A stretch of DNA of 63,156 nt, the filler included, from Octopus bimaculoides (taxonomy: Eukaryota), in the NCBI RefSeq assembly GCF_001194135.2. It is 5 parts of 5 records of this genome, joined end to end, with 100 filler letters (N's around TTAATTAATTAA, not from the genome) between each part and the next. Parts side by side here need not be neighbours in the genome. Positions count along the whole stretch, not along the records: positions 1 to 22,039 come from NC_068986.1; 4 more parts are not named here. One strand, given 5' to 3'. The position numbers and the translations under genes are program-made. Positions 16,273 through 16,590 of this stretch are shown one piece after another. Below the pieces are notes generated by a model. That model did no database searches. It was given only the letters and a program-made list of their open reading frames with translations, and had not been told where the DNA came from. Numbering within the stretch: position 1 is the first letter of the stretch; every line of letters starts with the position of its first letter.

Positions 16273-16590
16273 CGTACGAACGAACGTACATTCGTCCAGG
16301 CCAAGAGCAACGAACGAAGTTCCGTAGCTCTTGGCTCTCGAACGAACGTACGTACGTTCAGGCCAAGATCAACGAACGAAGTTCCGTAGCTCTTGGCTCT
16401 TAACCGAACGTACGTACGTTCAGGCCAAGAGCAACGAANNNNNNNNNNGAACGAAGTTCCGTAGCTCTTGGCTCTTAACCGAACGTACGTACGTTCAGGC
16501 CAAGAGCAACGAACGAAGTTCCGTAGCTATTGGCTCTCGAACGAACGTACGTACGTTCAGGCCAAGAGCAACGAACGAAGTTCCGTAGCT
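16273..16590. repeat. CpG-rich tandem array, 62-bp unit, at least 5 copies, each carrying two hairpins
   Basis: GGCCAAGAGC recurs at 16299, 16361 and 16423, then after the 10-N gap at 16498 and 16560, giving a period of 62. Confidence 0.95.

What the first reader, a model, noticed from the sequence alone, without database searches (positions are those of the whole stretch)
16273..16590. 62-bp CpG-rich tandem array built entirely from two hairpins per unit
Seen: the period is exactly 62 bp. Each unit has a perfect 16-bp palindrome GAACGTACGTACGTTC and a second, longer hairpin GCCAAGAGC-A-ACG-AAC-GAA-GTT-C-CGT-A-GCTCTTGGC (9-bp outer stem plus an inner stem). There are two unit variants (CTCGAACG and CTTAACCG). 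CpGs are intact right at the edge of a CpG-depleted domain. A 10-N gap inside suggests the array is collapsed and longer. It starts exactly where an RTE-tail copy is cut, and the downstream segment ends in a Helitron-like 3' terminus near 17010. Established: Helitron/Helentron derivatives in Drosophila (DINE-1) and bivalves carry central tandem repeats. Inference: this is either a rolling-circle-element satellite seed or a multimeric structured RNA or cruciform-forming DNA unit that I do not recognise.
Basis: partly seen in the sequence, partly recalled or inferred. Interest (0 to 1): 0.7.

Follow-up and report, generated by a model that had tools for sequence, protein, structure and literature searches.

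The report
Hairpin-rich 62-bp minisatellite beside retrotransposon tail
A real short array of 62-bp units, each folding into two hairpins, sits exactly at the inner end of a LINE retrotransposon tail; it is most likely an ordinary transposon-associated minisatellite, and no evidence supports a new RNA or a Helitron cargo.

Summary
A 62-bp tandem array lies at 16273-16590, 3.9 or 4.9 units as assembled. Each unit carries a perfect 16-bp palindrome and a 36-nt hairpin. There are two linker variants, and CpG is high beside a CpG-depleted domain.

The 10-N gap says nothing about array length. Its flanks overlap exactly by 3 nt and also by 65 nt, so the array may be one unit shorter, as drawn, or longer.

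The array abuts the 5' edge of a minus-strand LINE 3' tail (RTE-like; 16117-16272). This is the junction where two other tail copies in the window (5466-6047, 15185-15549) carry their own, unrelated tandem repeats. The tail-proximal unit is degenerate and the far end is cut cleanly inside a unit. That pattern fits a 5'-truncated retrocopy of an "array plus tail" element, my best reading at about 0.4.

The claimed Helitron 3' end near 17010 is not there. A genuine Helitron transposase N-terminal remnant lies at 17426-18050, but nothing links it to the array.

There is no Rfam family, no covariation, and no match in any searchable collection. I could not test copy number elsewhere because no host genome was reachable. 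Interest is low to moderate.

The parts
16273..16590 (.). 62-bp tandem array: one degenerate unit (U0), then units with linker types A, B, [gap], B, A; the last unit is cut at unit column 55
   Evidence: TRF; unit alignment; per-unit differences
16439..16448 (.). Assembly gap of 10 N inside the array. The flanks are out of register by -3 nt and overlap exactly by 3 or 65 nt.
16344..16359 (.). Perfect 16-bp palindrome GAACGTACGTACGTTC; also at 16406-16421, 16481-16496 and 16543-16558
   Evidence: 0 expected by chance
16300..16335 (.). 36-nt hairpin: 9-bp arms GCCAAGAGC/GCTCTTGGC plus an inner 6-bp stem. Copies with a single arm mismatch lie at 16362-16397 and 16499-16534.
16117..16272 (-). 3' tail of an RTE-like LINE, ending in (TGA)n, which reads (ATC)n at 16122-16136 on the + strand. 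Its 5' edge touches the array.
   Evidence: alignment; blastn; nhmmer E 5.8e-48
16591..17007 (.). Single-copy segment with normal CpG, containing a 23-bp x3.1 repeat at 16790-16861. Its origin is unknown and it has no copy elsewhere in the window.
17008..17061 (.).
17426..18050 (+). Helitron Rep/helicase N-terminal remnant (ATG at 17426, N gap 17727-17790). Context only; not shown to belong to the array.
   Evidence: Helraiser 7lcc_A residues 175-248, E 3.9e-12; no further Helraiser-like segment downstream
5466..6047 (+). Comparator copy A: a 51/66/117-bp tandem array (5466-5872), then the same tail (5873-6047) ending in (TGA)n
15185..15549 (+). Comparator copy B: 3' UTR of a decayed LINE, with an RVT_1 reverse-transcriptase ORF at about 13850-15075, 26-28-bp tandem repeats and the same tail (15391-15549)

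Best explanation
The array is the tandem-repeat module of a LINE-tailed retroposed copy on the minus strand. It is not a free-standing functional element.

In this genome the LINE whose 3' end is the roughly 150-nt tail plus (TGA)n carries tandem repeats directly upstream of that tail. In this copy the upstream module is a different, palindrome-rich 62-bp repeat.

Inferred steps: a transcript reading array then tail was reverse-transcribed from the (TGA)n end by the LINE enzyme, through target-primed reverse transcription. Copying stopped inside an array unit, which left the clean cut at 16590. Unit number then changes by slippage or unequal exchange, which the hairpins favour.

Shown: the anatomy, the shared junction, and the polarity of unit decay.

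Inferred: co-mobilisation, transcription, and the existence of other copies.
For: 1. The tail at 16117-16272(-) is homologous to three other copies in the window (nhmmer E 1.8e-53 to 7.4e-07). One of them follows a reverse-transcriptase ORF (RVT_1 E 7.4e-11).

2. In copies A and B, tandem repeats run up to the same boundary (...AAAA|GCACCC). In this copy the 62-bp array runs up to it as well (...CGTACG|GCACCC).

3. My own estimate: by chance, a tail truncated within 5 bp of that junction and also touching an unrelated array is unlikely, roughly 1e-4. Only four arrays of period 20 or more exist in 22 kb.

4. The tail-proximal unit is the most diverged (57/62), so it is an old array edge. The distal unit is consensus-perfect (55/55) and cut abruptly, as expected for 5' truncation of a retrocopy.

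5. The array does not continue on the other side of the tail. This argues against an insertion into the middle of a pre-existing array.
Against: - The 62-mer has no sequence similarity to the repeats of copies A and B; local alignment scores fall below shuffles.
- Those repeats do not fold better than shuffles (z -0.2 to +0.8), so no shared 'hairpin module' function can be claimed.
- No target-site duplication was found.
- No second copy of the array-tail junction could be found, because no genome of the host was searchable.
- The RTE clade of the LINE is inferred, not tested.
Confidence: 0.4

Rival explanations
1. A local minisatellite unrelated to any mobile element. It grew in place from a (GAAC/GTAC)n-like 4-bp periodic seed by slippage and unequal exchange. 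A 5'-truncated LINE tail then happened to insert at its edge, or the array grew at that junction.
For: The palindrome core reads GAAC GAAC GTAC GTAC GTTC, and the inner hairpin is a diverged version of it (sequence). Units are 93-94% alike, as in young local arrays. No other copy was found anywhere searchable. No target-site duplication frames 'array plus tail'.
Against: It needs two coincidences: truncation of the tail at the family's repeat/tail junction, and zero-distance adjacency to an array. It also fails to explain why one edge is degenerate and the other is a clean cut.
Confidence: 0.3
2. Central tandem repeat of a Helitron or Helentron-derived element (DINE-1/HINE-like), related to the Helitron remnant 0.84 kb downstream and spread by rolling-circle transposition.
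For: A genuine Helitron transposase N-terminal fragment lies at 17426-18050(+). Read on the minus strand, the order microsatellite (17008-17061), variable segment, tandem repeat resembles the left half of oyster Cg_HINE elements (PMC7492417).
Against: There is no hairpin or CTRR terminus near 17010. No 11-12-bp subterminal inverted repeats flank the array, where shuffles do as well. The place of the right flank is occupied by a LINE tail. The transposase remnant is about 90 residues only and is separated from the array by a microsatellite.
Confidence: 0.12
3. A transcribed multimeric structured RNA. The tandem double hairpins, or the 84-nt inter-unit hairpins, would serve as small-RNA precursors or as an unknown ribozyme-like or circular RNA.
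For: Predicted structure is very stable on both strands (z -5 to -10.6). The dimer forms a long, pre-miRNA-like hairpin.
Against: No Rfam family reaches threshold; the best hit is mir-4677 at E 6.3, 17 bits against 80. No hammerhead core motif is present. There are zero compensatory changes, and both substitutions inside the stems of internal units break a pair. Perfect DNA palindromes fold equally on both strands, which is typical of a DNA-level feature.
Confidence: 0.05
4. Assembly or library artefact, such as an adapter or vector concatemer or a mis-join at the gap.
For: No single contig spans the array. The gap flanks overlap exactly by 65 nt, so one unit may be a scaffolding duplicate.
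Against: Each contig joins at least two units to unique genomic flank. The units carry ordered variants. There is no match in plasmids or phages, in prokaryote genomes or in papers.
Confidence: 0.03

Closest known systems
RTE-clade LINE 3' partial elements that carry and spread simple or tandem repeats (Tay et al. 2010, PMC2887409; octopus RTE-2_OV, whose 3' UTR is mostly microsatellite, PMC9115989)
   Same: A LINE 3' end with a terminal short repeat, here (TGA)n. Frequent 3'-partial copies. Tandem repeats inside the 3' UTR next to the tail; copies A and B in this window show it.
   Different: The repeat here is a 62-bp palindrome-rich unit, not a microsatellite. It is unrelated in sequence to the repeats of the sister copies. 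Co-mobilisation is not shown.
SVA-type composite retroposons: a VNTR body plus a 3' end used by a LINE enzyme (own knowledge)
   Same: A variable tandem-repeat module upstream of a 3' end recognised by a LINE enzyme; 5'-truncated copies end inside the repeat.
   Different: SVA is L1/polyA-dependent and hominid-specific. Here the tail is a stringent-type LINE tail with (TGA)n. No multi-copy family has been demonstrated.
Cg_HINE / DINE-1 non-autonomous Helentrons with central satellite-like repeats (PMC7492417)
   Same: A short satellite-like array in a mollusc-type genome beside a microsatellite and a variable segment, with a Helitron protein remnant nearby.
   Different: The defining subterminal inverted repeats, 3' palindrome and termini were sought and not found. 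One flank is a LINE tail.
Satellites born from tandem repeats in retrotransposon 3' UTRs (Ogre elements in legumes, PMC7004042, by title and abstract)
   Same: A short array inside a retroelement's untranslated region could act as a seed for a satellite.
   Different: That case involves LTR elements in plants. Here, amplification beyond 4-5 units is not shown.

Membership tests
Tandem repeat / minisatellite | Head-to-tail copies of one unit, far beyond chance | tested here: met
   TRF period 62, 3.9-4.9 copies, 93-94% matches; motif counts against 0 expected
LINE-tailed (RTE-type) retroposon | 3' tail homologous to the 3' end of an autonomous LINE, ending in its terminal short repeat | tested here: met
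   Tail 16117-16272(-) against copies A, B and D. Copy B follows an RVT_1 ORF. (TGA)n is present.
LINE-tailed (RTE-type) retroposon | The LINE belongs to the RTE clade | not tested
   Inferred from the terminal (TGA)n repeat, the C-terminal motif and the literature on octopus RTE (PMC9115989, PMC8967140). No phylogeny was run, and the protein searches returned nothing.
LINE-tailed (RTE-type) retroposon | The body (array) is joined to the tail at the family's body/tail junction, on the same strand | tested here: met
   The same boundary (|GCACCC) occurs in copies A, B and this one
LINE-tailed (RTE-type) retroposon | Several genomic copies share the body-tail junction | not testable with these tools
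   No host genome was reachable; all collection and protein searches were empty
LINE-tailed (RTE-type) retroposon | Target-site duplication | tested here: inconclusive
   None of 8 nt or more was found, but copy A shows none by eye either
SINE (pol III head) | tRNA-, 5S- or 7SL-like head with A and B boxes | tested here: not met
   ARAGORN found 0 genes. No tRNA or other Rfam hit at E of 10 or less in 15000-18000. The only trace is an isolated B-box-like GGATCGAATCC on the minus strand at about 16658.
Helitron / Helentron non-autonomous element | 3' subterminal GC-rich hairpin followed by CTRR (Helitron), or a 3' palindrome (Helentron) | tested here: not met
   16930-17012 folds no better than shuffles (z +0.6). 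The sequence there is ...CCAGCTTG followed by (TG)n.
Helitron / Helentron non-autonomous element | 11-12-bp subterminal inverted repeats framing the repeat-bearing element | tested here: not met
   One low-complexity hit against 2.8 expected, and one hit against 0.7 expected
Helitron / Helentron non-autonomous element | Flanks shared with an autonomous Helitron or with other loci | not testable with these tools
   Only a roughly 90-residue RepHel remnant lies at 17426-18050. No other copy is available.
Known structured RNA (Rfam: ribozymes, miRNA and others) | Match to a covariance model at its gathering score | tested here: not met
   0 matches at gathering over the whole window. The best sub-threshold hit in the array has E 6.3.
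Known structured RNA (Rfam: ribozymes, miRNA and others) | Compensatory changes that keep the helices | tested here: inconclusive
   0 pairs changed on both sides. Two stem substitutions in internal units both break a pair. Only 6 rows were available.

The most novel reading that the evidence does not exclude
The 62-mer is the body of an undescribed, LINE-mobilised retroposon family. Its RNA would be a string of near-perfect double hairpins, effectively long dsRNA. In that case each copy would be both a mobile element and a ready-made small-RNA (siRNA/piRNA-like) precursor or cruciform-forming site, seeded across the genome.
Probability: 0.1. Interest if true: 0.55.

Novelty: new member of a known kind. 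Interest (0 to 1): 0.25.

Why it matters
If the array-plus-tail unit turns out to be multi-copy, it would be a clear example of a LINE tail spreading a hairpin-forming satellite seed in a mollusc or cephalopod genome. In that group, only Helentrons have so far been documented as satellite carriers, in bivalves.

If it is single-copy, it is an ordinary minisatellite. Its practical interest would be as a fragile, hard-to-assemble site (it already broke the scaffold) and as an unmethylated CpG-rich spot at a methylation-domain edge.

Tried and rejected
External searches for the 62-mer, all empty:
- Exact scans of viral contigs, metagenome contigs and prokaryote genomes.
- blastn against plasmids and phages.
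- Full-text paper search for four fragments of the unit.

Attempts to reach host DNA through proteins:
- Array peptides, the LINE C-terminus and the array-tail junction ORF returned nothing.
- An HMMER scan of 1.84 billion proteins with the junction ORF gave only three spurious hits to bacterial beta-helix repeat proteins.
- Exact-product look-ups of window ORFs were not on record.

Other dead ends:
- A metagenome scan with a tail motif gave six 30-nt chance matches, L001-L006.
- Homology between the 62-mer and the repeats of the sister copies: rejected.
- The idea that all tail-adjacent repeats are hairpin modules: rejected, since copies A and B fold like shuffles.
- A tRNA-like head: rejected.
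- Helitron terminus and subterminal inverted repeats: rejected.
- Pfam did not recognise the Helitron fragment; only the solved Helraiser sequence did.

The host taxon was never confirmed by a tool.

Full report
**The observation**

The array is real. TRF finds period 62 at 16277-16590. In register, the units are:
- U0, 16275-16336, 57/62 identical to consensus.
- U1, 16337-16398, 61/62.
- U2, 16399-16438, cut by the gap.
- U3, 16449-16473, beginning after the gap.
- U4, 16474-16535, 58/62.
- U5, 16536-16590, 55/55, then an abrupt end.

The 16-bp palindrome is perfect four times, against 0 expected by chance. The 36-nt hairpin occurs once perfectly and twice with a single arm mismatch. The two linker variants occur twice each. 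Predicted folding far exceeds shuffles as RNA on both strands and as DNA.

**The gap**

The left flank stops at unit phase 39 and the right flank restarts at phase 37. The flanks overlap exactly by 3 nt and also by 65 nt, whereas a 127-nt overlap has 8 mismatches. The 10 N are therefore nominal. The array is 243 bp if the gap is false, 305 bp if no unit is missing, or 305+62k bp.

**Surroundings**

The sequence left of the array, 16117-16272, is the reverse complement of a roughly 150-nt module ending in (TGA)n. That module recurs at 5873-6047, 15391-15549 and, decayed, at 10393-10512.

The copy at 15391 is the end of the 3' UTR of a decayed non-LTR retrotransposon. Its reverse transcriptase is recognisable (RVT_1 E 7.4e-11; translations). 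The RTE clade is inferred from the terminal repeat and from literature on octopus RTE elements (PMC9115989; PMC8967140). I did not test it.

In copies A and B, tandem repeats of 51/66/117 bp and 26-28 bp run right up to the tail boundary (...AAAA|GCACCC). In the copy under study the 62-bp array runs up to that same boundary (...CGTACG|GCACCC). The array therefore occupies the slot that tandem repeats occupy in sister copies, on the same (minus) strand.

**Limits of that link**

The 62-mer is not similar to the A or B repeats; local alignment scores fall below shuffles. The A and B repeats do not fold better than shuffles, so I dropped the idea of a conserved hairpin module. No target-site duplication frames the tail alone, tail plus array, or tail plus array plus the next 417 bp.

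Two facts still favour one retro-copied unit:
- The tail-proximal unit is the most diverged, which marks an old array edge. The distal unit is consensus-perfect and cut inside the unit, as a 5'-truncated retrocopy would be.
- The array does not resume on the far side of the tail.

**The Helitron idea**

The proposed 3' terminus near 17010 has no hairpin (z +0.6) and no CTRR. It is the start of a (TG)n/(ATAG)n microsatellite. No 11-12-bp subterminal inverted repeats frame the array, although they define the oyster Helentron carriers (PMC7492417).

However, 17426-18050 (+) encodes the N-terminal part of a Helitron transposase. After an N gap, 17793-18050 matches Helraiser residues 175-248 (E 3.9e-12). 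Pfam misses it, and no further Helraiser-like segment follows. It is a short remnant 0.84 kb from the array, and nothing ties the two together.

**The structured-RNA idea**

No Rfam family reaches threshold anywhere in the window. At E of 10 or less, the only hits in the array are mir-4677 at 17 bits against a gathering score of 80. On the unit alignment, no pair changes on both sides. The two substitutions inside stems of internal units (16369 G>T, 16529 C>A) each break a pair. With six rows this is weak evidence, but it gives no support for a selected RNA structure.

**CpG**

Observed/expected is about 0.0-0.3 over most of 1-16000 (higher at 6001-8000), about 0.4-0.6 at 15800-16200, and about 0.9 from 16200 to the end. 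The array itself is at 1.86. The tail copy next to the array keeps 5 CpGs, against 1 and 0 in the copies inside the depleted domain. The array is thus inside a CpG-normal domain at least 6 kb long, not an island at its edge.

**Outside data**

Nothing searchable contains the 62-mer: viral, metagenome and prokaryote contigs, plasmids, phages and papers were all empty. Every attempt to reach host DNA through the protein collections failed. Copy number and shared flanks elsewhere, which are the decisive facts, remain untested. The host taxon is unconfirmed.

**Verdict**

This is a genuine, hairpin-rich 62-bp minisatellite of about 4-5 assembled units. It is most likely the tandem-repeat module of a 5'-truncated LINE-tailed retrocopy (0.4). 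Alternatives are a local minisatellite that merely abuts a truncated tail (0.3), a Helitron-borne repeat (0.12), a functional RNA (0.05) and an artefact (0.03). It is a new member of a known kind, and interest is low to moderate.

Noticed in passing
window 17426-18050 (+): Helitron Rep/helicase N-terminal remnant. It has an ATG at 17426, an arginine-rich 'ET.EQ' region, an N gap at 17727-17790, and then a match to Helraiser (7lcc_A) residues 175-248 at E 3.9e-12. Pfam does not detect it, and no Rep or helicase part follows.
   Followed up: yes
window 18692-18847: Near-perfect 150-nt foldback: 74-nt arms, 88% complementary, 8-nt loop. RNA MFE is -100.7 kcal/mol, z -17.9. No Rfam family matches. 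It may be a foldback MITE or a long hairpin RNA locus.
   Followed up: partly
window about 15800-16200: Sharp step in CpG observed/expected, from about 0.1 (mostly below 0.3 across 1-16000, with higher values at 6-8 kb) to about 0.9 (16200-22039). It looks like the edge of a methylated (gene-body?) domain. LINE tail copies inside the depleted domain have lost their CpGs, while the copy outside keeps 5.
   Followed up: partly
window 5466-5872: Tandem array of 51/66/117 bp directly upstream of a LINE tail (5873-6047). It appears to be the usual 3' UTR repeat of this LINE family, and related 26-28-bp repeats lie at 15185-15390. Despite short palindromes, it does not fold better than shuffles.
   Followed up: yes
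window 6425-6991 (-) and 20139-20432 (+): Two mariner/Mos1-type transposase N-terminal fragments (HTH_48, E 2e-14 and 3.5e-05; SETMAR-like). The first is interrupted by an N gap.
   Followed up: partly
window 16790-16861: A 23-bp x3.1 tandem repeat (CTCTCGCCAACCTCCGACAATCT) in the single-copy segment between the array and the microsatellite. Its origin is unknown.
   Followed up: no
L001-L006 (metagenome contigs): A 23-nt motif from the LINE tail (GAAGGGCATCCNNCTGNAGAAAC) has six exact matches in metagenome contigs. Homology extends only about 30 nt, so these look like chance matches rather than the same element.
   Followed up: partly
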